In this document: positions 11,731-41,659 of the stretch, in pieces | Layout: every line of letters begins with the position of its first letter | How positions within the stretch are numbered: position 1 is the first letter of the stretch | Assembly: GCF_030144855.1 (NCBI RefSeq) | Contig: NC_082730.1 | Coordinates: 14,570,001 to 14,634,000, forward strand | Reading direction: 5' to 3' | DNA: 64,000 bases | Source of the DNA: Hypanus sabinus | Lineage: Eukaryota | Position numbers and translations under genes: made by a program | The notes under the pieces: model-generated | The model's database searches: none | Told to the model about the DNA's origin: nothing | Seen by the model: only the letters and a program-made list of their open reading frames with translations

Positions 11731-13105
11731 TGTTATGGCTTATAGCTCCAAAACAGTAAAATAATTCAAAGGAAAACAAGGGAGCCGAGAAATGTGAATC
11801 TTAGTTTGTGTTTTTACTTTAAGTGAGGTGCGCATGTATTGCGTTGGTGTCATGATATATGCTTGTAATCTGTATTTAATTATTTAAACAAACAATATGT
11901 ACAATATTATTCAAATATTGTAAAATATGAAATACACAACATTCCTCCCTGCTTAGTTGTAAATAGCAACTCAATATAGTATGCACCTCAACTATTTACA
12001 AAGTATAATACATCATGCAGCTATTTGCAGGTATCCACAGCATAAAAAAAATTTAATTTGACCCATTCAGGCCTAACGATTTAATTGCTGTGGAGGATTT
12101 CTTACTCTTGTGGGACAATATCTTTCCTGACCAGTAGGATCATTCTGCCTGATCATTAAAACTTGTGGCTGTGAAAAAATCTCAGATTCCTTGGTGGTGG
12201 TGGTTATAGGAACTGACTCTGAGACTGCAGGATGTGGTTCTGACAGTGCAGGACATTTATCTTCTCCTTCACTTTTCTTTTACTAGTTTGAGCATCTTGA
12301 TGTTGGGAAGATGCAGTGAGTTCACAGGAGTATTCACTTTTGAATCCTTCTGTTTCTCCCATTACAATCTGCTCTCTCTCTCTTGGTTTCCTCATCCACA
12401 TCATCATCTGATGAAACCTATGCTTTTGATTCTCCTTTGACTCCTTTCTTTCATTATTCCATCTGGACTTTGGTCTTTGCATCTACTCTTACAAACAGCT
12501 TTTAGTCTCTCACTTGAAGTTCATGCAATCAACATAATACATGCAGAGTAGATTCTTTATATTCACAAAAGCTGAATGCTCGCAACTTTCTTGAAACTTC
12601 TTGAACTCTGTCCCCACTTAAAACCAAGCCACATTTCACAAATAACTGCCTGACTAACATGCCAGAATCTTTCACTGATATGTTGCCTATAAAAGCTGTT
12701 GTAGTCAGACCAGTGTTTTAATCATTTTCACACTTCTACTAAACAGCATGGTCCTTCCTTGTTTCAATATGATTTCCAACCAGTAGTACAGAGATTAGCA
12801 CCAACATCTATTAGTCCTCTGTTGGGCAGTGGTTCATGTTGTTCTGCATGGAGACAGTTGTGACATCATCCAGTACCTTTTTAAATTTGTTTTCAGTTGG
12901 CTTTGTTGCAGGGAATATGGCATGCAAATTATTGAATGGATTTCCAATCAAGTAGTAGTTGTTAATGTGGCTTGTTTTTGCTGTATTTCACTGGTGCAAA
13001 TGTCATTCCCACAGGATTACTTTTTCCCCTGGATAAGTTCTGCAGGTTTCAGCTTGGAAACTTTGAAAAGCCATTCAAATTCATTTTCTGGAATGACTGA
13101 AACAG
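11731..13105 (-). mobile_element. 5'-truncated Gypsy (K02A2.6-like): protease remnant, RBM25 insert, integrase tail, PPT, 3' LTR (11731-11941)
   Basis: Protease-like SPVSVIPENEFE..KVLDDVTTV; tail CPALSEPHPAVSES; purine tract at 11942-11954 next to a TG..CA LTR. Confidence 0.8.
12265..12849 (-). pseudogene. RBM25: Intronless RBM25 fragment (RRM domain and flanks) captured inside a Gypsy element
   Basis: Manual translation gives VGNHIETRKDH.., TTTAFIGNISVKDSGMLVRQLFVKCGLVLSGDRVQEVSRKLRAFSFCEYKESTL..LHELQV..KLFVRVDAKTKVQM..DEETKR..SEYSCEL. This matches RBM25 (TTTVFVGNISEKASDMLIRQLLAKCGLVLSWKRVQGASGKLQAFGFCEYKE). Several stops and frameshifts. Confidence 0.9.
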
Positions 13106-13206
13106 GTGAATGACTTAATCCTGCTCCTGTGTTTATGGTCTTATGGTCTTGACTCCCTCAAGAAAATCCAGGAGCCCAAATGTGATCTGTTTGACATGTA
13201 TAAAGT

Positions 13207-13565
13207 TTTATTCTCATCCAAGCCAAAAGGATAAATGACTCATTAACATCAGCAGTTTATAAACAAGTATCTTAACTGATTACTTATTAATTATTGGAAT
13301 ATCCAACAGCAACAGTCTCAGGCGTTTAAATCCATAGAAGAGAGTTTAATAGAGTAAAATGGTTTTAAGCAATTCACAGCTGTGATAGGGTTAAAAATTG
13401 AGATCAGTGGGAGTGACATGTTGGAAATGGAATGCTAAAAATAAGTCATTGTCTTGAAGTACGGTAACATAATTTTTTCACCTTCATGAAGTTAACAGTT
13501 TAATGACGAGAGGATTACTCTTCCATAAAGTGGGAAGAAGTATGAATATTTTATCTTGTGCAAAA
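13207..13565 (-). pseudogene. Paralogue B1 last exon / 3' UTR remnant
   Basis: 13400-13565 aligns by eye with 48950-49140; AATAAA at 13207-13212. Confidence 0.55.
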
Positions 13566-13892
13566 TTCAAAAATCCAGTAAACAGAAGCCTTCAGGTTAA
13601 CTTATGGACCCGTCTGAGAGGAGCTGATACATTGCCGCTCTGCAAAAGGCAACAGTCAAATCTTCAGACTCGTTGACACTGTGAACTTTGCTTTAGAGTT
13701 GTGCCTGGAGCTTGGACTCCAATATATTCACATCAAGCATTCTGCACACACAGTGTGTCAACATCTTGTCGATATCATCTGCAAATATCTTTGGATTGAT
13801 CATTGGATAAGAAAAGGTCAATGTGTTTAAATGTCTTTCCTTAAGTGATGAGTATATTTGAAAGCAAATTCCACTGATGTCCAGAGGCCTAC

Positions 13893-13982
13893 CTCAGTTT
13901 CCCTTGTGAACCACAAGACTGAAATAGTGTAGTTCATCAGAGAGTGAAGAGCAGCCAACGACCAAGCTTCCATATCATGAAA
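13893..13982 (-). pseudogene. Paralogue B1 TM exon with 1-nt deletion
   Basis: cccctttggtcag|TTTCATG...GAG|gtaggc; 90 nt versus 91 in gene C. Reads FMIWKLGRWLLFTL then TGA TGA; the shifted frame resumes LMNYTISVLWFTRETE. Confidence 0.82.
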
Positions 13983-15763
13983 CTGACCAAAGGGGAAGAG
14001 ATACAGAACTGATGAAATGAAACAAGATGGCTTTGTGTTCGAGACATTTACCTCCTGTTTCTTCTGTAACCTTAGTGGAGAGGAGTGAGGTAAGTAAGCA
14101 GAGCCAGAGGAGTTCAACTAGAAGAGTAAACTGGTGTTGACTGAATGACTGGATGGGGGAAGGGGAACAACCTGTGATTACTAGTTACAGACACATAATC
14201 ACTGGGTCTTGGTCTTTGAATTGAAAACTACACTGTGAAAATGGAATTAGGAAAAATTGAGAAATTAGAATTGCAGAGGTGCTTTTATGATACTGAAATG
14301 GCATTGGATGAAGTGGACATAGCTGTAAGAAAAATGTCATCCAGGGCATAACTTCTTCTCATTGCCACCATCAGGGAGCAGGCGAGGAACATGAAGACAC
14401 ACTCTCAATAATTTAGGAACAGATTCTTCCCCTCCGCCATCAGATTTCTGAAGACAAAATGAACCATCCCATGAACACTACCTCACAGTATTTTGCTTTA
14501 GTTTTGCACTACTTATGAATATATATTTATTTTTTTTATATTCATTTATAGTTTTTTATGTATTGCAGTGTACTGCTGCCACAAAATAACACATTTCATG
14601 ACATGTGCCAGTGATATAAAAGCTGATTCTGATTCTGTGAGGAAGACAGAAATAGAGTCCATGTAAGTAAATATGAAAAATAATGAAGGATAGATGACCC
14701 AATATCAAACCGAGAAAAATAATCATGCGTGATCAAAAGTATCTCTTTATTCCCTGGACAACAGAGGGAAAAGCAAAATTGAGTTCAGCAGTTTCAAAAG
14801 GCCCCACGCACAGCAGAAGATCTGACTTACCAACAAGAGACTTTCTAAATTGGAGAAACAATGGGGTAAATCAATCAGGGCAATGAAAATGACCAGATTA
14901 TAATGCACTTATGATGATAAGAAGGTAGGAACAATGTAGGAATAAAAAGAAATTGCCTCAAGACAATGGTGTCAACTTTCATTGCAGCCATTCCTTAATT
15001 TTATTATGGTTATTGGATTTACTGAGTATGCCCGCATGAAAACAAATCTCAGGGTTGTATACAGTGGCATATATGTACATTTCTGAATTGGACTCAGTTT
15101 GCAGTTCCTCAGCCCAAATAACCAGCTGATCAAGATCCTAGGTAATTCTTCAAAACCCTATTCACTGAATAATTACCTGTTTGAGTGTTATCTGCAACTT
15201 ACACATTTTTCCATAGTTACTGGCATTGAAAATTTGGCTAACACAGCAAGTTGTTACCTTATTGTTTATTGCTTTACCTGCAATCTTTGAGTCAATGCTA
15301 TGTCCGGTAATATCACAGCAAGAGAAAGCAGCATCCTAGGGTTTGGCAAATGCACAAATGTAAGTCATCTCACAGCATGGGAGGAGGTTAGTGACGGAGT
15401 AGTGATGGAGAACATTGTATGACAACCTTTGAGTGCAGCAAATGATTCTAATTTCCAAAAGATAAACATTAGAAGAAGAGACTCATCGTGCTTTTCATTG
15501 TGCATTGGTTGTTAAGAGTGGATATATCTGAGGGATATAAATTATGAGATGTACAGGTTGGATAGAGGACAGCAAACTTTCCCATTCTCAGAGGTGAATA
15601 AATCTAGATGACATAGATTTGGAAGGGATTTGAAGGGATTGTTCTTACCCAGAGAGTGGTGGCAACAGAGTCACAGTCAGAGTTTGGAAAGTGTCTGAAT
15701 GCGGTCTTAAATCATCTCTCAATAAAAGCGATGGGCCATGTGCTGAAAGATAGGGTTTATATA

Positions 15764-16107
15764 CAGTGCTGTGCAAAAGTCTTTTGCACACGTAAAATAA
15801 TTTTGTATAGTGAAGATGTTTTCAAAAACAATTAAATGAAAAGTTTCTGAATAACAAAGAGCAGGAAAATCTTTAAAACTTCATCACTGCCTCTAGGGTT
15901 TTTGTCATGCAGTTCTATAAGAAAATCAGCTGGTAGGTTGTTCCAAGAATATTGGAGAACTTGCCACAGTTCTTCTGCAGACTTTGACTGTCTCACTTGC
16001 TTCTGTCTCACCAGGTAATCCCAGACAGCCTCAGTGATGTTGAGATCAGTTCTCTGTGGTGGCCATACCATCTGAAACAAGGGGCTTAATATATTTGCAC
16101 AGTACTC
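15764..16107 (-). mobile_element. Tc1 deletion derivative
   Basis: TA-flanked TIR cagtgctgtgcaaaagt; transposase C-terminal motif WPPQRTDLNITEAVW. Confidence 0.78.
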
Positions 16108-16849
16108 TACATGGATGGGCAATGGAAAGCCACATGGCCTTTGTCTGTGCTGTACGTCTCTGGGACCGTATGAATCTGTTACACAACAGCAGGATGTGAA
16201 CCCGGATCCTTATCATTCAAAGTAGATTTATTTTCAAAGTGTATGTATGTCACCATATAAAATTCAGATTTACTTTCTTGTGGACATAATAAATCTATGG
16301 AATAATAACCACCACAGAATCAATGAAAGACCATCCAGCTAGAGTGTTCAACCAGAGTGCAGAAGACAACTATGCAAACACAAAAATAAAGGAATAAGTA
16401 AATAAGCAATAAATATCAAGAACATAAGATGAAGAGTCCTTGAAAGTGAGTCCATTGGCTGTGGGAACATTCAATGTTGGGGCAAGTGAAGTTGAGTGAA
16501 GTTATCCCTGTTGGTTATCCATTATCCATTCCAAGTATCTACTTCCAAAATAAAAATGAATATCAACTTTTATCTCTAAGTTATTACAGACTATTCAGAG
16601 AGATTAATTTATCTTGCAGTCTCAGGCCCAAAGCATGCAGAAGAACATTGGTTATAGTACTGGTTGTGGAACTGAAAACAATAGTCCCACTGCAGTTCCG
16701 CCCAAATAGATAAAGTTCTAATTTACCCCCTTAATCATCGCGATGAGCCAAATGGCCTAATTCAGTTCCTATATCTTGTGGTCTTACTTGGGTGCAAGGC
16801 CATCATACTTTCCTGAAAAAATTCCAACAGGATTTTCATGCAATGAAAA

Positions 16850-17335
16850 ACAGTTCTTCTGTGACAAACAGTTCATAAACGCATGTAGACATGGTCAAGA
16901 GACTCAGTTGTTGACCATGCCTAATATTAGAATGAAGAGCAAATACGATTTTAGTAACTTTGACTGTGGAATGATAATTGGTTCCATATGGAGAGGTTTA
17001 AGTATCTCAGAAGCTGTTGATCTCCTGAGATTTTCATGCACAACAGTCCCTTGAGTTTACAGAGAATGGTGCAAAAAACAAAAAACAATATCTACTGAGT
17101 AGAAATTCTGAGAGCAAAGGTGCCTTGCTAATGAGGTAGGTCAGAGAAGAATGACCAGGCTGGTTCAAGCTGACAGAAATACGACAGGAATTCAAATACT
17201 CATGCATTCTGACAGTGGTGTGCAGAACAACAAGTCAAACCTTGAACTGAATGGGCCACGGCAGCAGAAGACTATGAATATACACTCAGTAGCCACTTGC
17301 TGAGGTACGGGAGGTACCTAATAAAGTGACCACTG
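16850..17335. mobile_element. Tc1-like element at a site paralogous to 4955-5512
   Basis: Same terminus followed by the same unique flank (taaaggcag..tgagatatccatca). Confidence 0.7.
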
Positions 17336-19379
17336 AGTTTTAAAGGCAGCTACTTGAGAGATATCCATCACACGTTCGGTGGCTTCCAGGAGAGAATGAA
17401 ATTGTGACTGTGTTCGGTGACTACCCAGTAGAGGGGAAAACTTTTGGCACTGATATTAATACAGAGATAGTGAGGGATGAGCAGGGCCTGGATAAAGATC
17501 TTCCAATCTATTCTGAGGCTGAGCAAAAGGAGTAGGAGACTGCTGTTCTTCAGACGCATCCACAAGATGGGCATTTCAGCAAGCTTAACCCCATGACACT
17601 GATTTCAATGCCATAATGTTATTTGTCGCAGTGATCCCTGCAGAGTGAGATCAGATTCCAGCAATATGATAATCAATTGGCCATTATAGAAGGAGGAACA
17701 AGCTCAATGGGCTGAATGGTTGAATTTTTCCCCTATGTCTTATGGTCTGAAGTGATTGGGAGAAAATGGAGCAGGTTGTTTATGTGAAGCATTCATTGGT
17801 ACTTCCCCAAATTCTGCTTTGTAGGACAAGTAAATAAGATTGAAGTTCTTAACTATACCCTTTGAGAATTGTTTTGAGACTTCCTGGTACAAGGAAAGGT
17901 TCTTGTTCAGAATCAGAATCAGGCTTATTTTCACTGTCTTCAGATGTGAAATTGTTGTTTTGCAGCAGATGAAAGCAAAGCAAGTTCCTTCCCTTAGACC
18001 ATCAACAAGCTCAGGTTTATCAGGTCCAAGTTCACAAGTGGGACCACTGTTTCTGGAATTATCTCCAGCTCATCAACACCTAACAGATAACCCTGAGCCG
18101 AAGAGGTTAAGAGCTCCAATCAGTCTTTGGTGTTACTGCTTCACATCCTCATATTACAGCTGAAGGATATCCCTCCTTCTCAGTGGGGTATTTCAAAATT
18201 CAGAATCCAAATTAAATTTATTATCAAAGTGCATATATGTCACCAAATACTAACCTAATTATAATTGCAAAAATGTGGTTCATCTTCTCATTTTCATGAA
18301 CATTTATTGTTCACTCATGGGTCACAGTCACAGATCAGTACTGAGAAAAGTTACACCTTCTATTTGCAGATTCATACCCTGATGACCGTTGCAAGCTGCA
18401 ATAATTTTCATTTTCAGCTCACTCAGTTTATTCAGCACCCAGCTGTTCTTTCCATTGCTCATTCTTCTTTAAGACCTTTGTACAGTGACTGGAAATGTTC
18501 ATGCTGTGTCTCTTTTTCACTCCATTTCTATAAAATGTGTTATGAAAGGTCAATGATCATGCACTTTATCAAAGTTGAAAAACTTCATTGCAAACTTATT
18601 ATCGAAGTATGTCTGTGTCACCATATACTGTCCTGAGTTAAATTTCCTTACAGGTATTCACAGCGGAACAAAGAAATGCAAAAGAATCAAATTAGACTAT
18701 TCACAAAGACTGACGCACTACCAAACTGCAAAAGAAGGCAAACATTGCAAATACAACAAAAAATTAACAACATAACTAAATAAATAAGACTAAGATATGA
18801 ATTGCAGACACCTTTAAAGTGAAGTCATAGGTTGTGTTCAGTGAGTTAAGTTATCCACTCTGGTTCAGGAGCTGGATTGCTGAACTGTTCCTGAACATGG
18901 CCCATCATTCAGCTCCATGAAATGTAGGAAGGACGGATGCTCTATAGACCAAGAGCCTTGTTTAGACATGTCGGTCACATATTCCAAAGACCCTTTTCCT
19001 TAATTTTTCATAGACTACATTTGCACGGCTAAAGCAGTGATTAACCTCTGATCAATATCTGCTTTTGAGGAAAGAATGCTGTCAAGGTAGGAAAAGTGGT
19101 CTATTTTTTAAGGTTTAAATCATCTTTTATGGAGGTTTGGATAAATATTGGTTAGATGGTGGCTGGTATAGGACCTGTTCCTTTTTTTAAATATTCAAAA
19201 CAAGATTCAAGGCTCTATATGCCTTGGCAAAGGCATTCAGGGTACATTGGAAGTCTTCTTCAGAATGTGTTTTGATGGTGTTGTCATCCGCATACAGAAG
19301 CTCCATGATAGTGATGGTGCTGACCTTGTTCTTGGACTTGAGCCAGTTGAGGTTGAAAATTCTGTTGTCCATTCTATAC

Positions 19380-21000: not shown

Positions 21001-21004
21001 CAAT

Positions 21005-23400: not shown

Positions 23401-23455
23401 CAGGTTGATGGTAATAGGCAGTTTAAGTGGTTTCAGCATGGACGAGATGGGTCAA

Positions 23456-25499: not shown

Positions 25500-26620
25500 T
25501 ATGGTCGTATGATAGACATGGCAATGCATTCCCTAGCTTGGACAATGACATCATCAATGAGGTGACTCTATTTCGATTGGATATGTTGCCTAGATACCCT
25601 GAATTTCCTTATCTGGTGGAATAGAATGTTTGTGATGATAAGATTGTGCTCAGCACATGTGGGGAGTGATGCACCATCAATAACTCTCGAAGACGAGAGG
25701 CGAGATATAGGCTTTTATTGGCTGGAAGAAAGAACAAGCAGCAATTGACCACCACACTACATCCTGGAGACTGAGACCGGGGCAGCAAGGTGGGGGCATG
25801 TCCAGACAGGTATATGTAGTTCACCACAGGGAGTCATGCTCCATTTGATTTTATTCAGTGCCCAGCCTTACTTTCCATTGATCATTATCCTTCAGACCTC
25901 TGTACAATGACAGTCATTGTGCTCAAAGTGAATAACTCATTGCAGTATTCTCTGTGTATTGATATTCCTTAATATATCAGGAAAACATGTGCCTGTCTGA
26001 AATAAAATTTGCAGATGATGGAAACATTCAGTAGGTCAGGCAGCAACTACAAGGGAAATAACAAAGTTAAAACTTCAGGTCAACATTTTTCAATAAAATC
26101 ATCCTGATAGGATGTCATCATCTGAAGATTATTTGATTCTTTCTCCTAAAAGTTTCTAACTACTGACACCTTAAAGAAAATCTAGGACCCTGAATTCATG
26201 AGAGAAGTTTCATTCTGAACAGTGCAAATGAATACATAGTTAATTGAAAACAGAACATTAAGAAGAAGCATTTCCATTTATATATTCATAGTTGTTCACT
26301 CAAATAAACAACAGTAAAGTCAGTAATTTGAATCTATAGAACAGATTTCAACACAGTAAAATAATTTTGAGCAGTTTGCGATCACGCAAAAGTTAAAAAT
26401 TGATGCTGGAGTGATGCAGGAAATCTTGAGAAGATGTCACAATATTAAGATCAGCATGGGCGAAGTGTTGCAGGTAGAATTCTATTAAACAAAGCCACTA
26501 TCTTGAAGTATGACAAGATTATTTTGCTTGATTTCACCTTCTAAGTCAATGTTGTAATAACAAGCAACATTAATTTTGTATTAAATCTCCACAAAGTATG
26601 ATAAATAATGAATAATGAAA
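25500..26620 (-). pseudogene. Paralogue B2 last exon / 3' UTR remnant
   Basis: Collinear with 47990-49135. The acceptor position reads caa instead of cag (26576-26578); AATAAA at 25850-25855. Confidence 0.65.
25667..25828 (-). mobile_element. Solo LTR (internally deleted), same family
   Basis: 5-bp TSD GGGAG; the empty site is visible in the paralogous sequence near 48120. Confidence 0.9.
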
Positions 26621-27531
26621 TGCAGAGGAGGCTTGACCTAAGATCGAGTGGTGGACCTACTTCTGACAAAGTAAATTGAAAGTAAATTTATTCTCAATGT
26701 ACATCTACATCAGCATATACAAAACTGAGATTCATTTTCTGTGGGCATTCTCAATAATTCTATAGAATAATGAAAATAACAGAATCCTATAAGACTGCCA
26801 AACTTGGGAGTTCATCTTGAGTGCAGAAGACAGCAAACTGTGCAAATACAAAAAGAAAGAAAGAAAAATAAGTAAAAAAGCAACCAATTTCAAGAACATG
26901 AGATGGAGTCCTTGAAAATGAGAATGATGGTTGTGGAAAAAAAGCCAAATTAAAAAGGTGCTGGCTATTCAATCTACTTATGCCTCCTACCACTATTAAC
27001 ACCTTTATCAAATTACCTCTTATCTTCCAAAGAGAGAAGCCCGAGCTCTCTCAATGTATCCTCACAAAAGATGTTATCTATACCAGGCATCATTCTGGTA
27101 AGCCTCTTCTAAAGCTACTATGTGCTTTCTGTATTGAGGTGACCAGAACTGAACACAATACTTCAAGTGTGGATTAACCAGAGTTTTTCGAGCTGAAACC
27201 TTACCTCAAGCCTCTTGAATTCAACCCCCCGACAAATGTTACTCACCCTATCAATGTGCATGGCAATTTCCTGTTCATGGGGCTTTTAGTAGACCAAGTC
27301 AAGACAGGGACGCAAACAAAATCTCAGGTGACATCTACTATTGGATTGTCTGAGCCGATTTGTCTTTTTACTTTAACATGTCTCCAAGGTAACACCAGTG
27401 ATTGAAAGTGGGTGTTCCTCTTTCTCCCACCCTCCCCTCCCTCTGCAAGCCACACCATCAATAATATCCCAGTAATTATATCTCATGTGGCAGTAGCGTC
27501 AATCAAAACACTGGTATTGAGGACATTGTAC

Positions 27532-27640
27532 CTTACAACAGAACTGGATCTTACAGTACCATTGAATCTTATTTCTGAATTTCTGGAATGTGAAGTCCTT
27601 GTTGATTCTGTTGCAGAATTTTCACAAGTATTTCTAGATT
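27532..27640 (-). pseudogene. Paralogue B2 stalk exon (short form), orphaned
   Basis: atcactacag|AATCTAGA...GTAAG|gtacaa; 109 nt, phase 1-2, open: ESRNTCENSATESTRTSHSRNSEIRFNGTVRSSSVV. Flanking introns are homologous to gene C. No V or TM exon found in this unit. Confidence 0.78.
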
Positions 27641-28698
27641 CTGTAGTGATAAAGAGATAAAATTCAATTCCAACAGCTTCCCTGTGCAACATGATGGGAT
27701 TATAGCTTGCAGAATATTGACGGCGAGTTTATTGACGTTGTGTGTTTGGATTTCCAGAAGTCTTTTGGTAAGGTTCTACCCGAAAGAATAGCATGTAAAA
27801 TTAAAATGGGTGGGTTAGAAGACTGATATGGATACAGAACCAGTTGACAGACAGAATTCAAACACAGGAATGAACAGCTCTGCTTTTGACGGGCAGGAAC
27901 CTCACAGTGGAAAACTGATGTATTCAGTGCTAAAATCCCAATTAGTATCATTGTATATTAATAACACAGTCAAGTGGGATTAAATATGTCAAGTTTGAAG
28001 AGGGCAGAAAGCCAAGTTGGAATATGTACAATGAGGAGGATCTTGACTGTCATTTGGACCGATTCAGCAAATGAATAGCAGATGCAGCATACTGTAGACA
28101 AATGTGAAACTATCTACTTCAGTGTGGTCAATGGAAGGTTCTAGAGAATGAAAAGAAACATCATTCTCAAAGGACTGGAGAAATGATTTTAGTGAAAGAT
28201 GTTCCCCATCTAAGCATATGGGGTAAGAGGTTCAAAACTGAATTGTGGTGAAATTCCTTCACCCAGAGGCTTCACCCAAATTCTCCACCTCAGAAAACAG
28301 CTGAAGTGGAATTATTAAGTATATCCAGGGAGGAGCTGAAGATATTTCTTAAGTATCAGGGATCGAAGGTTAGGTGGGTGGTTGTAGGAATGGGAACTAC
28401 AGACTGAATATAGAAGATAAGCTCTGATTACATTACGTGGTGCCCTAGGTTCAAAGCGCCAAATGGTCTCCTCCAGCTCCTACTTTCTCAGTGTCAACTG
28501 AAATGGGCTGTTGGGAGGAAAGTTGCCAGAGATTTTATTCTGATTGAGAGTCTGCGATATAGAATGCTAACCGTTTCTCATTCCGCAGATGATGCCTGAC
28601 CTGCTGAGATTGGCCAGCAAATTATTTATTGTAAGATACAGTGGGAAATAGTTTATATGAACGATTTTTATTTGATTTAAAGGAGCTAGTATTTAAGT

Positions 28699-32400: not shown

Positions 32401-33784
32401 TGCAGAGATGCAAAACATCTTCAGCAAAACATTTTTGTTTCAGATTTACTTTATTGATCCTAAGGGAAATTGGTCAGCAATTGATCAGCAACTAGACCAA
32501 TGAACAGCAATAACAGTTTGTTGTAGAAATGTGAAAAGGCCATTTAATCACTGTGGTTAAACCTAATTCCAATCTATGCACACCTGGCAATACAACAGTG
32601 GGATTGTAAAACATCTTCCATTCTGTTGTGAAGTTATCCAACAACTGTAGCTTTATAAAGTATTGGTCAGACTGCACATGGAATATGATAAGCAGTTTTG
32701 TGCACCTTATCTTTGAATGTATGTTCTGCAATTGAAGAGGATCCAAAGAACGATCCCAGAAATGAAGAGGTTAACGTATGAGGAGTGTTTGATGGCTGTG
32801 GGCCTGTACTTGGCTGGAGTTTAGAAGAATGGTTGGGGTCGGGGGGGGAGTAGGTAGGGAGGTGGTGTTTGCATTGAAACCTCGTAAATCTCGAAGGGCA
32901 AAAATCCATGATGGACTGTATGTGGAGAGGATGTTTCCAACGGTGTGTGACTTGCTGACCAGAGGGTGCTGATTCTGTGGAATTCATTGTCACTTGAAGT
33001 GGAGTTTGATAGGTTTTTGATTAGTTAGGGTGTCAAAGGTTATGGGGAGAATGGGGTTGAGGGGTATAAAAATATCAGCCATTATAGAAAGAGGAATAGA
33101 CTCGGTGGGCTGAAAGGACTCAGGTTTAACATGTCCAGAGTCACAATTGGGACCACTGCATCTGGAACTATCTCCAGCTCATTAACACCCAACAGATAAC
33201 CCTGAGCTGAAGAGGTCAAGATCTCCAAACAGACTCTGGTGTTACTGCTTCACATTGCCACATAGCAGCTGAAGGATAAAATGTGGTATTACTCCTTGTG
33301 AGTATGGCATTTCAAAGATTAAAATTCAAATTAAATTTATTATCTAAGTGCATATATATGTCACTATATACTACACTGATTATAATGCAGTTCACCTTCT
33401 CTCATTTTCAAGACTCTTTATCGTCCATTCATGGGCTACAGTCACAGATCATTACTGAAAAAAGTTACACCCTCAATTTGCAGATTCACACCCTGATGAC
33501 CGATGGATGCTGCAATATTTTGCAGCTCACTCATTTCATTCAGCACCAACTTTTATTTCCATTGCTGCTTCTCCTTTAAGAACTTTGTACAGTGACTGGA
33601 AATGTTCATGCCAGTGTCTCTTTCTCACTCCACTTCTACAAAATGTGTCACTGAAGGTCACCTTATCAAACTTGAAATTATTATCAAAGTATGTGTCACC
33701 TGGAGATTCATTTTCTTACAGGCATTCACAGTAGAACCAAGAAATATGTAACACTCAGCTCTATCAACCCACGTTCGTCTAGGG

Positions 33785-35528
33785 CGGGGGTCGGCAACCT
33801 GCGGCTCCCGAGCCATTTGTGGCTCTTTCACCTCTGTGCTGCAGCTCCCTGTGGCTTTGGGAAATAATTGGTCAGTATTTAATTAAAATGTATTTTATGT
33901 TAGTTTGTTAGCTTTTGAAATGTAATTCTAAATTTGAAGATTATGGTGATCTTGTACAATCTAAGTGTGGCGACATCCGAAACGGCTCACAATTAGCCAG
34001 CATTCCAGCTAAGGGAGATAGCCTACGGGGGTTTGTGAGTACGCGTCTTTTGCAGCATCTGCGTCCATGGGGGCTGGGTTGAGAGAGGCTTAAAAGCAAG
34101 GCTGTTTAGTTCGAATAAAGCTAACTTTGACTGCAGTTTACTGACACCGCTACAACGTGTTTTTATCGCTGGCTGTCCAGACGGAAGGTGCTGAAATGCT
34201 TTGTCGCGTGTCTGGAAGAAGTGAAAACTTTCCTGGGCAGCAAAGGGCTCACCTTTCCTGAGCTGGAACAGCCAGAGTGGCTGGAAAAGCTACACTTCAT
34301 GGTAGACATGACAGCGCACCTGAACACGCTGAACACAGCTCTTCAGGGGTAAGGACGTACAGCCCTGCACATGTTGGAGGATGTTTTGGCATTCGAGCGC
34401 AAGTTGACAGTGCTTGCCAGAGATTTACAGAAAGGCACTTTGTCTCACTTCCCCAATTTGAGAGAGTTCAAACAAGGTCACGACATGATAATTTCGGAGT
34501 ATTTACATTCTGCAATCATCGCAATGCAAACATCGTTTGGGAAATGCTTCTGTGAGTTCAGAGAGGAAAAAAACACATTATCCTTCCCGGTCACTTCCCT
34601 AAGTATCAATCCATCCCTACTGAATACGACTGCATTGGCAGGTGTGAGTCAACCTGATCTTGAGATGGAACTGGCCGACATAGCCGACAAAGACATATGG
34701 GTGTCCAAGTTTAGACGCTTGACAGCAGACCTTGAAGATGTTGCCCGTTCTTGCTCAGAAACACAAATGGAGTGATATTGAAAACCTTCCAAAACCGGAC
34801 AAACTTGTGTTCGAAACATGGAATGCTATGCCCGACATTTATGTAAACATTAAAAAGTATGCGCTTTGAGTCCTGTCGATCTTTGGATCCACATATGTAT
34901 GTGAGCAGGTGTTCTCCAACATGAACTTTATTAAAAACAAACATCGCGCACGCCTCACAGATGACAGCTTGCGATCCTGTGTAAAGATGAAGGTGACGTC
35001 ATACAGCCCTGATGTGCAGACGCTGTGCGCTGAGGTCCAGGAGCAGAAATCCCATTAACCAAGTATGATAAATATTTTAATTGCCTATTATTTTATGTGT
35101 ATTCATATTTTTTCATTGTTCAGTGAAATAGTCCTTTTATTTTTCAGGCTGACAGCTGGCTGATGTTATTTTTGGTTTGCTGCTGGCGGAAAATTTAAGT
35201 TCGGCGTTTTTCATAAATACAAGAAGGACTCAAATAGACGTTGAGTATTTTACTTAAAAGTAACTTTCAACCCAATGTCTTTTTTTCAGAGTTCAAAATG
35301 TTTTTGTTGCATGCAGAAATGTAATTTCGTTTTCTCTGCAGGAGTTCATCAATTTCATAAATGCAACACATTATAGTTTGTTTATACATAGCATAAAGGC
35401 AAAAAAAACGTTGTATGCAGTGTTATTTCATTTTAAATGTCAAACGGGTTTTGCGGCTCCCAGTGTTTTCTTTTCTGTGGGAAACGGGTCCAAGTGGCTC
35501 TTTCAGTGGTAAAGGTTGCTGACCCCTG
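33785..35528 (+). mobile_element. hAT (Charlie/SPIN, GTF2IRD2-like) deletion derivative
   Basis: TIRs cgggggtcggcaacc / ggttgctgacccctg; perfect 8-bp TSD GTCTAGGG (33777-33784, 35529-35536). Transposase C-terminal remnants about 34150-35060. Confidence 0.93.
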
Positions 35529-37724
35529 GTCTAGGGGAAACCATTGTCTGCCACTAAACCGTGCCTCACGTTTGCATATAGAGATGCTGTGTATGCACCC
35601 CAGCACAAACCCGCAACATAAAATATCAGGCAGTACACAATGTGCGTTTGAACGATCACACTTTATGAATTTTACTGTAACTATGGATTAGTAGAGAAAT
35701 AAAAATATAAAATAAAAAGACGCCAAAAATAGAAACTATACAGTTAGTGCTCATGTTGGAGCACACACAATATCCTCGGTCCACCATTCAATTTCCTCCA
35801 AACTGCACGACCCTCGGACAGGGACCAACCCGCTGTGGTCTATCAGAGCACTTCCCGCACGTCCTCCCTCTTCACTTCTCCTCGCCGAATTTCCCATGCA
35901 TCAACCCCAGATCCCACACATACAGATAGAATAACAAGACTCCCATTGGCTAGTCCCCCCATTATCAGTAGTTATAACCCACACATTTCAGCTACAGAGA
36001 AAATTGCCTCATTGTTTCAATGTGAGTATTATTAACAGTAAGTTAATACTAATCAGGAAGATATTGGTAACAAGCGGCTGGTTCTGGGGTTGGTGGGGGG
36101 CTTTACCTCCGGTGTGCATTGTTTGTAGTTCTACCACCCATGCCGCACGAGGTACCTGAAAGCCTCTGTATTGTAAATATCATTTGCCGTCCCAGATAAA
36201 GATGCTCTTTTGGCCATAAAATTGTCTAGTGGTCCTTTAGTAAAGTAGAAGTTACCACAGATTTCTGGCAACGAGGTGAACTGGTTTTGTGGATGTGTCG
36301 GCACGTTTCGAACAGGAGTTGCGCGGGGATGAGGAGCCTTGCATTTCGGATGGCTACGTTCAGGACAATCGGTGAATTTGTGGAGCAAAACGAGGACTGG
36401 CTGGAGTATGAGGAAAGGTTGGGACACGTTTTCTGTGCTAATGGAATTACTGAGGAGGCTAAGAAGTGCTCTATTCTCCTGAGTGTGTGTGGGGCAAAGA
36501 CTTACAAGCTGATAAGGAACTTAGCCATGCCGCAGAAACTGGGGGAAATTCCATATGACGAACCGGTCAAGCTCATGGGGAACCACCACAATCTGAAACC
36601 TTCAGTGATAGTCCAACAGTTCAAGTTTCACAGCCATTTCAGGAAGCCAGGTCAGTCTGTGGTCAATATTGTGGTTGAGCATTGCGATTTCGAAGCCGTG
36701 TTGGATGACCTGCTCTGTGACAGATTAGTATGCAGCATTAATAATGACGCCGTACAATGCCGCTTGTTGGGAGAAAGCCCACCGTTGACTTAGAGATTGC
36801 CCAAGGCATGGAGCTGGCTGCTAATAATGCTAAGGATATCCAGAAAGGACATAGGGGGGTTGCAGTCGGCAGTCAGGAGGGAGACTGGTAAACAGGCAAA
36901 GCGGGTGGAAATGTTTTTGGTGTGGAGGGATGTACTATGCAAATATTTGCAATTTCAAAGTTACTGTCTGCCATGCTTGTAGCAAAAAGGGACATTTAGC
37001 TAAAAAGTGCAGGAGCATAAAGGGCAAGGTTAAGCCTGGGCAGGGGAAAGCTCAGCAGATTCAGGCAGCCTCACACCACCTAGCAGAAGCAGACGAGGAG
37101 GCAGCGTGTGCCTACAACATGTTTGGTGTGGAAACGGATGAGGGACCACCTGAATCTTATTATGCCACAGTCACTGTTCAGGGAATGGACAAAAAAGTTC
37201 AAGATTGATTCAGGGACTATTGGATTGGTCATTAGTGAAGAGACCTACAGGAGGACATGGGGGTCCAACCTGCCTTCCATCAGACCGTCTAAGCGCAAAC
37301 TCAGGACCTATACTGCGCAGCCCATAGGGGTGTTATATGTGGGTATTTCAGCCGGGGTTCAGAAGGCTGAAGCCAGGCTGGTGATAGCTAAGGGCAGTGG
37401 GCCCAGTCTTTTGGGCCACGATTGGCTTCACAAAATTCGCCTCAACTGGCACGAAATTAAGTATGCACACATGGCGGAGGACATTCTGCAGCGGTATTGT
37501 GACGTTTTCAGGACGAGCTGGGTGCACTGAAGGGCGTGACCGTGAAACTCCATGTTGACCCTGAGGCCACACCACGTTTTTTTAAGCCCAGGTCAGTGCC
37601 CTTTGCCATAAAAGGCAAAGTCGAGGAGGGGCTGGAATGTTTACAGGGGATGGGCATCATTGAGCCCATCCAGTTTTCAAGGTGGGCAGCTCCCATTGTT
37701 CCAGTTTTGAAGGCAGACAAAACG

Positions 37725-38705
37725 CTTGTTGCAGTGTATGACGAACAAGAGGCGCAGTGTGCAGATGAATTCACTGATGGCAATGTGAGTGACAGACATA
37801 GTCCAGACACATTTGAGAGTGAGCTCACAGCACAGCTTGTGGCTTTTCAGCCTATTACAGGAGAAACTGAAGTTACCCCCTCGGCACTGAAAGCCAGCAA
37901 GCCACTTCCAGTACAACAAAGCAGTGACCCAGCTCTGGTACCACCTGCCCAGTTCCAGCAAGGTGCATCTCAGCCTGATGGTCCCACCAAACGGAATCTG
38001 CATGTGAAGCTATCATAACAGTAGCAAATGGGGCACCCACAGACAATATAAGAACAGAGCCTCCAGGACCACCAGACAAGCATTCAACAAGCACTCTAAG
38101 TGATTTGACAAAGAAGGTAGAATTTTCTGGAGATGGTAGCCCCCTGGGAATCCATGTGATGCCATTTAACTCTATGCTGACTGGAAGATTCCTTGGCCTG
38201 AGTATTTGTTGTATTGAAGAGAACCTGCTCCAGGAGAATGAATGTATCAGTGACTGTGATTTAACAGTCAAGACCTTTGTTCAAGCACAAGAGGTTTTCC
38301 GAAATGCATTGCAATTTCCTGCTGTTGAACTCCAGGTAGTTCCAGGTTATACCAAGGAACTCTATGAAAAATTTGTGATTTGGTCTATTCTGAGCCATGG
38401 TCGTGACAATGATTCAAAAACCAAACAACACACATAAAATGCTGGTGCAACACAGCAGGCCAGGCAGCATCCATAAGGAGGAGCACTGTCGATGTTTTGG
38501 GCCTAGATCCTTCGTCAGGACTGACAAAACTCTTTAAATTCAAAAACCAAAGTTCCTTCTTCAGTGGATTCCAAGCCAGGTGGCAAACCTGCAGATGCCA
38601 TTTATCCCAAAAATGCTGAGAATAGCTTGCCACTGATTTCAAAGAAGCTCAGTTGTCCAAAACAGTTAAGGAGCAATGACTGCTTAATGCATACCAGGAA
38701 AGCAT
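37725..38705 (+). pseudogene. PARD3B: Intronless PARD3B fragment (post-PB1 region, PDZ1, start of PDZ1-2 linker) captured inside a Gypsy element
   Basis: LVAVYDEQE..DRHSPDTFESELTAQLVAFQPITGETEVTPSALK..SSDP and TLSDLTKKVEFSGDGSPLGIHVMPFNSMLTGRFLGL..ENECI..DLTVKTFVQAQEVFRNAL..YEK..DSKTKVP closely follow PARD3B as I recall it. One frameshift near 38010; small in-frame deletions; the 3' end is approximate. Confidence 0.9.
38426..38551. mobile_element. Short retroelement tail (Penelope-like or SINE) inserted in the captured PARD3B
   Basis: 14-bp TSD ATTCAAAAACCAAA at 38412-38425 and 38538-38551; similar sequence at 46060-46240. Confidence 0.75.
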
Positions 38706-41659
38706 GTCCACCAGTGACTTTGCCAGAGGGAGAGAAGCTGGCAGAGGGGTCGGGGAGGATGGACATTCTCACACGGACACACAGACCCCGCTCATGTCCT
38801 GAACACTAAACATCCTCACCAGCGGTGCCTGCTGGGTCACCGGGGATAGTGCGTAGATTGCAGCACCCTCGCAAACCACCTGACAGACTGAATCTTTGAT
38901 TGGATAACTTTTTTTGTTGTTAGATTGAATGTTGAATTTGCCACGGTTTTTAGGTGTTTTATATTGGTAACCTGTTGCTAATGAGACCACTGTTTTTATT
39001 TCATAGTTCATCTATATTTGGGGAAGGTTGGATTTTAAAGGGGGAGAAGTGTTGTAATGTCAGTATTATTAAAAGTAAGTTAATAGTAATCGGGAAGCTG
39101 TTGGAAACAAAAGGCTGACTCCGGAGTTGGCGGGGTTTTTTATTTCCGATATTCATTGTATGTAGTTCCACCACCCATGCCGCACGAGGTACCTGAAAGC
39201 CTCTGTATTGTAAAGATCATTTGCCAGATAAAGATAAAAATTGTCGAGTGATCGTTTTGTAAAGTAGAAGTTACCACACTCATAGTTAACATTATAGAGA
39301 AGCCATTTCATTATAACACGATAGAGAGGCCATTTTATAATTAGCAGTTAACAGTTAACATTACAGTTAATATTACTGAGAGTCCTACGTTCCCTCCCCA
39401 CCGAATTTAGTCATGCCCTCATGATATTCAGATAATTTGCCAACCCTTCCTGCAAAACACAGAGCCCAATCCAAGTGCAGAAAGCAGTGACATAACTCCC
39501 CAAAACAGTAGAGATCACACCCTGCTCCCCAGGCGCTACATAGGCCAACCTCTCCGGGGGGGAGGGGGTTCCTAATCCTCTGAGACCTCTGTCACCCCCC
39601 CTTTCCTAGCTCCTCCGGCTCAGACACTACTGGAGCCACTTTAGGGCTACCTGGCAAAACCTCCTATGATCTGTCACTCAAGCCCCTCTGCAACTTGAAG
39701 CCCCTGCCTCAGCTTCCGGCCTCCCGCCCTCTACTCCAGAGTCCAGCTGCACTCCCTGTTGCAAAGCAAAACCCTGTTGCACACCTCACCTCACCTGACG
39801 CAATGGGAGAAGGGCCTGGAGCCTCTTCCTCCGTCACGGGGAAGTTAGCGAACGGCAGCATGTACCACACATCCGAATCATCATCCTCCAAATCAGTGTC
39901 CTTTCCTGGGGTTGGGCCGGCCCAGACTGTTTTGCAGTGTGCTCTTCCATCACCCCACACTTCCGCAGAGTCCTCGTACTAGGTGTAGACTCCAAATCGG
40001 GTTCCAGGTCTACCTGCACCTCTTGTCCCAGAGGCAACAGGTGGTTCCGATGAAGTATCTTGACAAGCTCCTTCCTGTCCTCGAACCTCACCGGAAAAAC
40101 TGGTAGGTTCAGCATCTGACTTTCCACCACACAGGGTGTGGCCACCCAGCGGTCAGCCAACTTGTGCTTTCCAGGTAAACCCAAATTCCTTATGAGGACT
40201 CGGACTCCCAGCAGGAGCTGGGAGAACTTCACTTTATGGTTATGCCTCCTCTTATTTCCCCGATTCTGCTTGGTGGCCACCACCCCTGCCAATTCATACG
40301 CCCTTTTCAGCTCTCTCCTCATATCAGACACATACTTCAGATAATGCTTTGGCAGTATGTCACCCGAGTCAGTCCCAAAACAGGGGTCAATGGGCAACCT
40401 CGCCTCGCGCCCAAACATCAGATAATAGGGCGAATACGCAGTAACTTCATTGCGTGTACAGTTGTAACTGTGAACCAGATGCCCAATATGTTGACTCCAT
40501 CTGCTCTTTTTACTGATCTCCAGAGTCCCGAGCAGGTCTAGCAAGGTCCGATTAAACCTCTCAGGGTGGGGATCGCCCTGCGGATGATAGGACGTGGTCC
40601 TCAATTTCTTAACTCCCAGCATGCACAGTAACTCACAGATGAGCTTACTCTCGAAATCCTGTCCCTGGTCACTACGTATCCACCGGGGAAGGCCGTAATG
40701 CACAAAAAACTTCTTCCATAACATTTTTACCAATGTAGTCACCCTCTAGTCCTTGGTAGAAAAAGCCTTAGCTTATCTAGTGTAGTGGTCCGTGATGACT
40801 AAGACATTTGTGTTGCTGACATTGGGCCCTGTGGACAGAAAATCCATACACACCAGGTCTAGGGGCCCTGCACTCTGCAAGTGTGACAGAGGAGCGGCCT
40901 GCACAGGCAGCGTCTTCCGGCGTATGCAGCGAATGCACGACTTGCAGTACACTTCAACTTCTGACCTTATTTGGGGCCTGTCTTTAAGAAATCCATAGGC
41001 CCTCTCCACCCCCAAATGTCCAAAATCATCGTGCAGTGATCTTCAACGCAATCTGCTGATACTTCTCAGGCAGGACCAACACCGAGGTTGGTCCGGGGTG
41101 ACGTTACCCAGTATAACATTTGTTTCTTCAACTTCAACCGAGGCCATTCCCTCAGTAATAGAGGCACTGAAGCGTGTTTTGGCTTCTCCACACATGCCAT
41201 TTACCCCTTTTCCACCGCGCACTAAGTAGCACCAATGCCTGGGTCATCTCGTTGGGCAGCTGCTACTTCCACTGGATTTAATTCTGGCAGCTGCTTGGTC
41301 TTTAGAGCAATCAGGTCACAGTAAACTGGGGGTAGGGCATCATCAGAAGCCCCCAATGGGTCCACTGCTTGGTCTGGCCTCTCCTTTTCCTCGGCCTTCA
41401 CAGTGATAGCAAACAGACACAAGGCTTTCACACCAGGGGCAGGAACGCTCTCCCACTCCTAGTCCCTCTCCGGTTCCTCATGCATCCATCGGGACAAAGC
41501 GTCTGCATCGACATTCCTGCACCCTGGACGGTACTTCAGGCTGAAATCATTTACCGACAAGGCCACCAACCACCAATGGCCTGTAGCATCCAGTGTTGCC
41601 GAGGATCAGGATGTAAGTGAGTGGGTCGTTGTCTGTCCTTGCCTCAAACTTGGCCCCAT

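What the first reader, a model, noticed from the sequence alone, without database searches (positions are those of the whole stretch)
11731..39278. Two independent host-mRNA captures with the same layout within 28 kb: possible class of cDNA-carrying non-autonomous Gypsy elements
Seen: two different LTR families, both K02A2.6-like. Each retains protease-side sequence and the integrase tail/PPT/LTR and swaps RT-RH-IN for a coding fragment of an unrelated housekeeping gene (RBM25, PARD3B). Inference: two cases in one window suggest LTR-mediated transduction is frequent in this genome and may be an unrecognised source of domain shuffling or antisense/piRNA against host genes. LTR-mediated retroposition is known in other animals; its extent here is unknown to me.
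Basis: inference. Interest (0 to 1): 0.85.

Follow-up and report, generated by a model that had tools for sequence, protein, structure and literature searches.

The report
Retrotransposon carrying a captured host-gene fragment
One old, dead jumping gene in this stingray-like DNA demonstrably carries a spliced piece of the host polarity gene PARD3B. A second, half-preserved case probably carries a piece of RBM25. This kind of capture is already known in other animals, so the find is a clean example rather than a new phenomenon.

Summary
**Element 2 (36013-39278, + strand) is confirmed.** It is a Ty3/Gypsy "K02A2.6-like" LTR element.
- It has two LTRs (K2P 0.155) and a 5-bp target duplication (CTCAT).
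- A paralogous empty site lies at 44953-45481.
- It keeps gag, a zinc knuckle, protease and the first 73 residues of RT.
- The rest of pol is replaced by about 860 nt of intronless PARD3B coding sequence. The integrase tail, polypurine tract (PPT) and 3' LTR follow.
- In hornbill the same PARD3B stretch is split into six exons over 76 kb.
- The host piece starts at the first base of an exon conserved in hornbill and Tetraodon. This points to read-through plus splicing at the 5' joint and a template switch at the 3' joint.
- Two stingray genomes annotate single-exon relatives. One shares the 3' joint, so the chimera predates this insertion.

**Element 1 (minus strand, 11731 to about 12870) is only half supported.**
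- It has an RRM-bearing fragment. I identify it as RBM25 from memory only.
- This runs in frame into an integrase-type tail, then a PPT and an LTR-like end.
- The claimed protease motif sits in a dispersed-repeat fragment.
- No gag, protease, RT or second LTR was found.

**Verdict.** This is LTR-mediated retroposition, a known mechanism (Tan et al. 2016). Its frequency in this genome is untested.

The parts
36008..36012 (+). Element 2: left copy of the target-site duplication CTCAT
   Evidence: Joining the flanks with one CTCAT restores colinearity with the paralogous copy at 44953-45481.
36013..36259 (+). Element 2: 5' LTR (TG...CA)
   Evidence: Pairs with 39050-39278: 86% identity over aligned bases, K2P 0.155.
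36350..36790 (+). Element 2: gag-like ORF, ending in a stop and then frame-shifted. A CCHC zinc knuckle follows at about 36966-37013.
   Evidence: Stop-free 36230-36790. Colinear with L001 from 36677. Matches the N-terminal part of P0186. Weak zf-CCHC hit, E 0.004-0.02.
37195..37512 (+). Element 2: aspartic protease (DSG at 37207)
   Evidence: 72% identical to P0007, which carries PF13975/PF13650. Family protease profile E 7e-31.
37503..37724 (+). Element 2: first 73 residues of reverse transcriptase, ending ...PIVPVLKADKT
   Evidence: 208 hits, all covering only this part of the 171-aa ORF; some are named 'K02A2.6-like'. Normal relatives continue ...RICGDY. L001 colinearity ends at 37724.
37725..38425 (+). 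Element 2: PARD3B-derived intronless coding sequence, first part. It starts LVAVYDEQE and runs through PDZ1. It is in frame with the RT remnant. It now has a stop at 38016, a frameshift and two small deletions in PDZ1.
   Evidence: Representative-library search: best named hits are PARD3B of axolotl and teleosts (E 1e-20 to 1e-15); PARD3 is weaker. tblastn map. Alignment. Hornbill exon map. Start coincides with an exon start.
38426..38537 (+). Secondary SINE-fragment insertion inside the PARD3B part, flanked by a 14-bp duplication ATTCAAAAACCAAA (38412-38425 and 38538-38551)
   Evidence: Repeat family D7, also at 9274-9371 and 46052-46149. Duplication coordinates. Absent from P0121.
38552..38699 (+). 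Element 2: PARD3B-derived sequence, last part (...SKKLSCPKQLRSNDCLMHTRK). It ends just before PDZ2 of the parent protein.
   Evidence: Alignment with P0121, P0187 and P0124. L001 colinearity resumes at 38700.
38700..38899 (+). Element 2: C-terminal tail of integrase (ACPPVTLPEGE ... RKPPDRLNL, stop 38897-38899), frame-shifted in this copy
   Evidence: Colinear with L001 2417-2645. Protein comparison with the L001 integrase end.
39037..39049 (+). Element 2: polypurine tract AAAGGGGGAGAAG
   Evidence: L001 has the same arrangement, AAAGGGAGAGAAG|TGTTGT.
39050..39278 (+). Element 2: 3' LTR
39279..39283 (+). Element 2: right copy of the target-site duplication CTCAT
11731..11941 (-). Element 1: LTR-like segment (TGTTGT...CA, 211 nt). 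It has no partner in the window.
   Evidence: Read; coordinates. No second copy. Its start motif is shared with element 2 and L001.
11942..11953 (-). Element 1: polypurine-like tract AGCAGGGAGGAA, directly before TGTTGT
   Evidence: A run of at least 8 purines followed by TGTTG occurs only 3 times in the window on both strands.
12073..12150 (-). Element 1: integrase-type C-terminal tail ...ERYCPTRVRNPPQQLNR, stop 12073-12075, in the same frame as the host fragment
   Evidence: The tail motif occurs only here and in element 2.
12180..12780 (-). Element 1: decayed RRM-containing host fragment, RBM25-like by my recollection. The RRM is at 12717-12532. It may extend up to about 12870. It has several stops and two compensating frameshifts.
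   Evidence: Pfam RRM_1 E=0.069. PDB hits are all RRM proteins. Frame reading. The RBM25 name is from memory and untested.
13085..13150 (-).
   Evidence: Alignment with 330-520 and 1377-1567.

Best explanation
**Element 2** is an old, now dead copy of a non-autonomous Ty3/Gypsy (K02A2.6-like) LTR retrotransposon.
- Most of its pol gene, from RT residue 74 to near the end of integrase, was replaced by part of a spliced host PARD3B mRNA. The captured part corresponds to residues about 75-383 of the axolotl protein and includes PDZ1.
- The chimera was made once, before this insertion.
- It was then copied by the proteins of autonomous relatives and integrated here by an integrase. It landed inside the LTR of another retroelement and left a 5-bp duplication.
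- Later it took a SINE insertion, stops, frameshifts and small deletions.

**Most likely origin of the chimera (inferred).**
- An autonomous element sat in sense orientation in the PARD3B intron upstream of the 'LIAVY' exon.
- A read-through transcript was spliced from a cryptic donor just after RT codon ...DKT to that exon's acceptor. This gave LTR-gag-PR-RT(N)-PARD3B exons.
- That RNA was packaged together with a normal element RNA.
- During minus-strand synthesis, reverse transcriptase switched from the normal RNA (integrase tail) to the chimeric RNA inside a PARD3B exon.
- This is the classic route of retroviral oncogene capture. It is a variant of the two-switch model of LTR-mediated retroposition.

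**Element 1** is probably a second, independent product of the same general process in a different LTR family. It would have captured an RRM-protein mRNA (RBM25 by recollection). Only its 3' half survives: host fragment, integrase tail, polypurine tract (PPT) and LTR.
For: **Shown for element 2**
- LTR pair, TG..CA ends, PPT and TSD.
- The flanks joined with one TSD copy are colinear across the joint with a paralogous repeat copy. Hence 36013-39278 entered as one unit.
- The related element L001 (protease, RT, integrase) is colinear with 36677-37724 and 38700-38904 only. This fixes both joints.
- The insert is PARD3B.
- In hornbill the matching residues lie in six exons spread over 76 kb. In the window they are contiguous.
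- The insert starts at the first base after a polypyrimidine-AG in hornbill. Tetraodon has an exon start at the same place.
- The 3' joint lies inside an exon.
- Both joints keep the reading frame.

**Relatives elsewhere**
- P0121 (Hemitrygon akajei, single exon, 345 aa) has the same PARD3B-to-integrase-tail joint.
- P0186 (Hypanus sabinus, single exon, 462 aa) is a gag-knuckle-protease-PARD3B fusion.
- The window copy and P0186 share derived protease features against L001.

**Shown for element 1**
- RRM signal.
- In-frame integrase-type tail, then PPT+TGTTGT at the expected spacing. These motifs are otherwise almost absent from the window.

**Literature:** the mechanism and the secondary retroposition of such chimeras are described in PMC5131818.
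Against: - The only nucleotide-level relative (L001) has GC, not GT, right after the joint (ACG|GCTAGG). The proposed splice donor is therefore not canonical in that relative, and the true parent was not seen.
- The ray's own PARD3B mRNA and gene structure were not available. Microsimilarity at the joints and the intron position in rays are therefore inferred.
- It is unknown whether the three PARD3B chimeras are paralogues or orthologues. Neither the species of the window nor the DNA of the other two loci could be obtained.
- Element 1 lacks gag, protease, RT and a 5' LTR.
- The RBM25 name for element 1 rests on memory only.
Confidence: 0.72

Rival explanations
1. Both joints of element 2 arose from two microsimilarity-guided template switches between a packaged mature PARD3B mRNA and element RNA. 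This is the Tan et al. model, with no read-through transcript or splicing involved.
For: This is the general model documented across animals. One base (G) is shared at the 5' joint. Both partners encode ...DK... there: element VLKADKT, and PARD3B ...EDKDK|L in axolotl. A short similarity is therefore plausible. The L001 relative has no GT at the site.
Against: The host part begins at the first base of an exon, to within the one shared base, and that exon start is conserved between a bird and a teleost. With about 20-25 junctions in an mRNA of several kb, I estimate a chance hit at under 1 in 100.
Confidence: 0.25
2. The host fragments are ordinary LINE-made processed pseudogenes that happened to land in, or next to, old Gypsy elements. 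Deletions then trimmed them. No capture by the LTR element took place.
For: The window is packed with LINE fragments, so the machinery exists. For element 1, no retroelement sequence is detectable 5' of the fragment.
Against: - Neither fragment has a poly(A) tail or its own flanking duplication. Both lack the 3' part of the mRNA, whereas LINE copies are usually truncated at the 5' end.
- In element 2 the fragment replaces a colinear stretch of pol exactly. It keeps the frame at both joints, and the same 3' joint recurs in another species.
- In element 1 the fragment runs in frame into the integrase tail.
Confidence: 0.05
3. Element 1 is not a chimeric LTR element at all. It is a decayed fragment of an RRM-protein retrocopy lying by chance beside an unrelated short LTR-like remnant.
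For: There is no partner LTR, TSD, gag, protease or RT. From 13150 upward the sequence belongs to a dispersed repeat with two other copies in the window.
Against: The tail motif with a stop, the spacing of about 120 nt, and the purine run plus TGTTGT reproduce the 3' architecture of element 2 and L001. These motifs occur only 2 and 3 times in 128 kb of sequence counting both strands. The fragment and the tail share strand and frame.
Confidence: 0.3
4. The PARD3B-like stretch is part of the real PARD3B gene (the window lies inside it), and the LTRs are unrelated insertions around an exon.
For: PARD3B is a very large gene with long introns (76 kb for six exons in hornbill), so TE-rich intron sequence like this window would be expected inside it.
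Against: - Six exons' worth of coding sequence are contiguous here.
- The reading frame is broken and interrupted by a SINE.
- The stretch is fused in frame to RT and integrase sequence.
- The whole unit is an insertion with a TSD and an empty paralogous site.
Confidence: 0.01

Closest known systems
LTR-mediated retroposition (Tan et al. 2016, Genome Res, PMC5131818; earlier cases include maize Bs1, rice retrocopies inside LTR elements, HERV-K/FAM8A1 and yeast Ty1 chimeras)
   Same: - A partial, intronless mRNA copy replaces part of the internal ORFs of an LTR retrotransposon.
- Both LTRs are kept.
- There is no poly(A) tail.
[quoted passage not shown]
   Different: - The host lineage is a cartilaginous fish (stingray-like), and the carrier is a K02A2.6-like Ty3/Gypsy element.
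- The 5' joint sits at a splice acceptor, which the two-switch model does not predict.
- Microsimilarity could not be measured without the native mRNA.
Retroviral oncogene transduction (read-through transcription and splicing, or deletion, for the 5' joint; non-homologous RT recombination with a co-packaged helper genome for the 3' joint). I cite this from established knowledge of the Swain and Coffin model.
   Same: - Sense-oriented host exons are fused in frame to gag-pro-pol.
- The 5' joint is at an exon boundary and the 3' joint is inside an exon.
- Replication genes are lost, so the element depends on helper elements.
   Different: - The carrier is an intracellular Ty3/Gypsy element with no env.
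- The captured piece is a scaffold and PDZ fragment with no sign of a selected function.
- The splice donor was not observed.
Non-autonomous LTR elements (LARD and TRIM types) and internally deleted Gypsy copies
   Same: These have LTRs, a PPT and possibly a primer-binding site (not examined here), with most of pol missing, and they are mobilised in trans. The relative L001 is itself internally deleted.
   Different: Here the missing part is replaced by host coding sequence rather than simply deleted or non-coding.

Membership tests
Ty3/Gypsy LTR retrotransposon, 'K02A2.6-like' group (element 2) | Direct LTRs with TG..CA ends, a PPT before the 3' LTR, and a short target-site duplication | tested here: met
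Ty3/Gypsy LTR retrotransposon, 'K02A2.6-like' group (element 2) | gag-protease-RT-integrase homology and order | tested here: met
   Protease and the RT N-terminus match proteins named K02A2.6-like. The relative L001 has protease-RT followed by Integrase_H2C2 and rve. The integrase tail is homologous. RT core, RNase H and the integrase core are absent from this copy, replaced by the insert.
Ty3/Gypsy LTR retrotransposon, 'K02A2.6-like' group (element 1) | LTR pair and target-site duplication | tested here: not met
   There is no partner for 11731-11941 anywhere in the window.
Ty3/Gypsy LTR retrotransposon, 'K02A2.6-like' group (element 1) | Detectable gag, protease or RT homology | tested here: not met
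   tblastn, two family profiles and Pfam found nothing. The 'DTGA-like' motif lies in a repeat fragment.
Ty3/Gypsy LTR retrotransposon, 'K02A2.6-like' group (element 1) | 3' end architecture: integrase tail R.R.PP..L plus stop, then PPT, then an LTR starting TGTTGT | tested here: met
LTR-mediated retrocopy or transduced element (as defined in PMC5131818) | The host sequence is intronless, i.e. it spans exon-exon junctions of the parent gene | tested here: met
   Element 2: six hornbill exons are contiguous in the window. Element 1: not tested, because no parent gene sequence was available.
LTR-mediated retrocopy or transduced element (as defined in PMC5131818) | The host sequence replaces a stretch of the element's ORFs rather than interrupting a continuous element | tested here: met
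   Element 2: L001 positions 1047-2416 are replaced by window 37725-38699. Element 1: cannot be judged.
LTR-mediated retrocopy or transduced element (as defined in PMC5131818) | Microsimilarity between mRNA and element at the switch points | tested here: inconclusive
   One shared base at the 5' joint against the hornbill exon. The 3' joint lies in a zone of similarity with L001. The native ray mRNA is needed.
LTR-mediated retrocopy or transduced element (as defined in PMC5131818) | No poly(A) tail and no LINE-type duplication around the host fragment | tested here: met
   Read directly from the sequence.
LTR-mediated retrocopy or transduced element (as defined in PMC5131818) | Secondary retroposition: several non-orthologous copies with identical joints | tested here: inconclusive
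   Three instances in up to three genomes, with a shared 3' joint and one structural variant. Paralogy versus orthology is not resolved.
PARD3B as parent gene of the element 2 insert | Best matches are PARD3B rather than PARD3 or other PDZ proteins, colinear over the linker and PDZ1 | tested here: met
   PARD3B of axolotl, Denticeps, Megalops and Arapaima at E 1e-20 to 1e-15. Pristis PARD3 at 1e-9. Colinear alignment.
RBM25 as parent gene of the element 1 insert | Specific sequence match to RBM25 beyond the generic RRM fold | not testable with these tools
   The word-index search found no candidate in the allowed length range. The PDB holds no RBM25 RRM. A peptide search of papers found nothing. 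By my recollection of human RBM25, about 60% of residues agree over the RRM and the following 'VDAKTK' stretch. This is a lead, not a test.

The most novel reading that the evidence does not exclude
The PARD3B chimera is a genuine mobile family in dasyatid stingrays, made by splice-mediated transduction. That is the retroviral oncogene-capture route, here operating in an env-less Ty3/Gypsy element. The long intact single-exon ORFs in Hypanus sabinus (Gag-PR-PARD3B, 462 aa) and Hemitrygon akajei (PARD3B-integrase tail, 345 aa) would then mean that some copies are still translated or have been co-opted. Together with the RBM25-type case, this would indicate that such captures are unusually common in batoid genomes.
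Probability: 0.15. Interest if true: 0.6.

Novelty: new member of a known kind. Interest (0 to 1): 0.38.

Why it matters
This is a well-documented vertebrate example of an LTR element carrying spliced host exons. It has intact hallmarks: LTRs, a target duplication, an empty paralogous site, and both joints mapped to the base or nearly so.

It appears to come from a group, the cartilaginous fishes, that was not among the six species examined in the paper I read (fly, mosquito, zebrafish, chicken, mouse, human).

The 5' joint at a conserved splice acceptor gives a concrete, testable hint. Read-through plus splicing may feed host exons into Gypsy elements, and not only template switching.

On the practical side, two stingray annotations list such chimeras as genes: 'PARD3B-like' XP_072896921.1 in Hemitrygon akajei and LOC132405607 in Hypanus sabinus. 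They should be flagged as retroelement-derived.

The finding does not show that capture is frequent, or that it has any function.

Tried and rejected
- **PDB search with the PDZ piece:** no hit.
- **Pfam on all pieces:** only weak knuckle and RRM hits.
- **Word-index search with the junction ORF:** found only RT relatives and no second copy of the RT-PARD3B joint. P0065 looked like an 84%-coverage hit, but it is an ordinary RT.
- **Word-index search with the RRM piece:** no candidates, because of the length window. A paper search for RBM25 peptides recalled from memory found nothing. A second search for RBM25 papers gave nothing usable.
- **DNA of the two stingray loci:** could not be fetched because the files are too large.
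- **Species of the window:** could not be identified by exact look-up of 11 window ORFs.
- **Search for a 5' LTR, protease, RT or gag of element 1:** blastn with short words, mismatch-tolerant pattern search, tblastn with 120 relatives and two custom profiles were all negative.
- **Nucleotide alignment of the 3' ends of elements 1 and 2:** no real similarity.
- **Rfam on 10-41 kb:** nothing.
- **Rejected: the window lies inside PARD3B.** See the rival explanations.
- **Considered, not pursued:** an eel gene model (P0011) breaks the RT N-terminus one codon before the same site. I do not count it as evidence for a donor.

Full report
**Setting.** The window is TE-rich vertebrate DNA with low CpG. 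It contains LINE reverse-transcriptase fragments, Tc1-like remnants and SINE copies. The closest named relatives of the sequences studied come from the stingrays Hemitrygon akajei and Hypanus sabinus. The species of the window itself could not be established.

**Element 2: structure**
- A direct repeat pairs 36013-36259 with 39050-39278. Over aligned bases it is 86% identical, K2P 0.155.
- Both copies start TGTT and end ACCACA. The 3' copy is preceded by the purine tract AAAGGGGGAGAAG. CTCAT flanks both sides.
- Between the LTRs, on the + strand, lie a gag-like ORF, a CCHC knuckle, an aspartic protease and an ORF (37503-38015). The first 73 residues of that ORF match the N-terminus of many Ty3/Gypsy RTs, some named 'K02A2.6-like'.
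- Every one of the 208 hits stops matching after ...PIVPVLKADK. Normal relatives continue ...RICGDY.

**Element 2: it entered as one unit.** I joined the left flank (up to one CTCAT) to the right flank (after the second CTCAT). The result aligns without a break across the joint to a paralogous repeat copy at 44953-45481, at 85% identity. That pair is itself an LTR pair (K2P 0.135) of an older retroelement. Its integrase and RT remnants lie on the minus strand at 39.8-44.3 kb. So 36013-39278, host fragment included, is one integrase-type insertion with a 5-bp duplication.

**Element 2: the two joints.** A related element was recovered from a metagenome scaffold (L001; protease-RT, then Integrase_H2C2 and rve). 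At about 75% nucleotide identity it is colinear with window 36677-37724, and again with 38700-38904. Window 37725-38699 therefore replaces what in L001 is the rest of RT and most of integrase. After 38700 the window encodes the integrase C-terminus (ACPPVTLPEGE...RKPPDRLNL, then a stop), as in L001.

**Element 2: what the insert is**
- An exhaustive profile-free search with 37979-38434 gave 51 hits. The named long ones are PARD3B from axolotl, Denticeps, Megalops and Arapaima (E about 1e-20 to 1e-15). PARD3 of Pristis is weaker, at 1e-9.
- The insert is colinear with PARD3B from LIAVYEEQE (axolotl residue 75), through the linker and PDZ1, to just before PDZ2.
- In the hornbill genome the same residues lie in six exons spread over 76 kb. 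In the window they are contiguous, so the insert derives from spliced mRNA.
- A SINE fragment (38426-38537) with a 14-bp duplication interrupts it. The fragment is absent from the stingray relative P0121, so it is a later event.

**Element 2: mechanism**
- The host part begins CTTGTTGCAGTGTATGACGAACAAGAG. In hornbill the homologous CTGATTGCTGTTTATGATGAACAAGAA is the first base of an exon, directly after a polypyrimidine tract and AG. Tetraodon has an exon start at the same place.
- Element sequence runs up to ...GACAAAACG, as in L001. At most one base is shared.
- A random break in an mRNA of several kb would hit an exon junction this precisely less than about once in a hundred. This is my estimate.
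- The simplest reading is that the 5' joint was made by splicing of a read-through transcript from a cryptic donor in RT to the PARD3B acceptor. The 3' joint lies inside an exon and would have been made by a template switch during reverse transcription. This is the classical retroviral transduction route (established knowledge).
- The caveat is that L001 has GC, not GT, after the joint, and the true parent was not seen.
- The plain two-switch model of Tan et al. remains a serious rival.
- Both joints preserve the reading frame.

**Element 2: other copies**
- The best hit, P0121 (XP_072896921.1, 'PARD3B-like', Hemitrygon akajei), is a single-exon 345-aa ORF. It is 82% identical to the window piece, and its C-terminus is the element's integrase tail joined at the same point.
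- P0186 (LOC132405607, Hypanus sabinus) is a single-exon 462-aa ORF reading gag C-terminus, knuckle, protease, PARD3B.
- Both lack the stretch from just after the protease to five codons into PARD3B, which includes the RT remnant. The window copy has the older structure.
- The window and P0186 share derived protease features against L001.
- The capture therefore happened once and predates these copies. Whether they are paralogues (true amplification) or orthologues is open.
- The two intact ORFs cover different parts of the element. This looks like independent decay rather than conservation, but it was not tested.

**Element 1: what holds**
- On the minus strand, one frame reads almost continuously from VGNHIETRKDH through an RRM (12717-12532) to ...KKSEGED...ITTTTKESEI. 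It has a few stops and two compensating frameshifts.
- The frame then runs on into ...ERYCPTRVRNPPQQLNR and a stop at 12073-12075.
- About 120 nt further lie AGCAGGGAGGAA|TGTTGTGT... and a 211-nt segment ending ...ATAACA at 11731.
- This reproduces the 3' architecture of element 2 and L001.
- In the whole window on both strands, the tail motif occurs only in the two elements, and a purine run plus TGTTG occurs three times. Chance co-occurrence is therefore unlikely.
- The RRM is weakly supported by Pfam (E 0.069) and by PDB hits that are all RRM proteins.
- I also recall RBM25 as the match, with roughly 60% agreement over the RRM and the following VDAKTK stretch. No tool could test this.

**Element 1: what does not hold**
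- The 'protease' NTGAG at 13133 lies within a ~60-nt fragment of a dispersed repeat also present at 351-507 and 1398-1554.
- From 13150 upward the sequence belongs to another dispersed repeat with copies at 25840-28126 and 48134-54774.
- Profiles built from 30 related proteases and 120 RT N-termini, tblastn and Pfam all find nothing.
- There is no second LTR and no nucleotide similarity to element 2.
- Element 1 is thus at best the 3' half of a chimera, and its family is unassigned.

**Comparison and verdict**
- The anatomy of element 2 meets the tested criteria of LTR-mediated retroposition in PMC5131818, except microsimilarity and secondary retroposition, which remain inconclusive. The splice-site joint resembles retroviral transduction.
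- It is a new member of a known kind.
- LTR divergence of about 0.15 implies an old insertion. That is on the order of 70-80 million years at 1e-9 per site per year. The rate is an assumption.

Noticed in passing
35529-36012 plus 39284 to about 39350, paired with 44953-45481: An older LTR pair (about 530 nt, K2P 0.135) encloses 39.3-44.9 kb. That interval holds two different integrase ORFs and one RT ORF on the minus strand, so at least two elements are nested there. Element 2 sits inside the left LTR. Its own LTR divergence (0.155) is not lower than that of its host LTR pair, so the two insertions are of similar age within error.
   Followed up: partly
38412-38551; also 9274-9371 and 46052-46149: A SINE-like family starting CAACACACA.AAAATGCTGG...GCAGGCCAGGCAGCATC. 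The copy inside element 2 has a clean 14-bp target duplication, so it inserted after the capture.
   Followed up: partly
37724/37725, 38699/38700 and about 12150-12190 (minus strand): All three host-element joints that can be judged keep the reading frame. The chance of that is about 1 in 27 if frames were random. It might reflect a need for the chimeric RNA to be translated through, or simply how the cases were noticed.
   Followed up: no
13150-16450, 25840-28126, 48134-54774: Three colinear copies of a long dispersed repeat on the + strand, 61-80% identical. The two longer copies run into the start of a LINE-type RT ('DFQKAFDKV'). The copy next to element 1 is cut short on the side facing it by at least 320 nt.
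   Followed up: partly
53947-54315: A tandem array of at least seven 39-nt units, read as open frames on both strands. A weak, surely spurious, Pfam hit to the lysostaphin N-terminal repeat was returned. The array lies just upstream of the LINE RT start.
   Followed up: no
P0011 (Synaphobranchus kaupii gene model) and P0015: Other predicted proteins break off the same RT N-terminus within one codon of the element 2 joint (...VLKGDG| and ...VLKRDK|). P0011 joins it to other exons, including a cytidylyltransferase piece. This may hint at a recurrent cryptic splice site in this RT region, or it may be an annotation artefact.
   Followed up: partly
L001 (ENA metagenome scaffold, 3141 nt): The closest nucleotide relative of element 2 comes from a sample labelled as a metagenome. 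It is itself internally deleted: protease and RT N-terminus are followed almost directly by integrase. This is probably host DNA within a host-associated sample.
   Followed up: no
15835-16209 (minus strand) and 11172-11529: Two Tc1/mariner-type transposase remnants (weak DDE_3 hit; 'PPQRTDLNITEAVWDYL') lie on either side of element 1. They are the same part of the transposase, so they are two copies, not one split element.
   Followed up: partly
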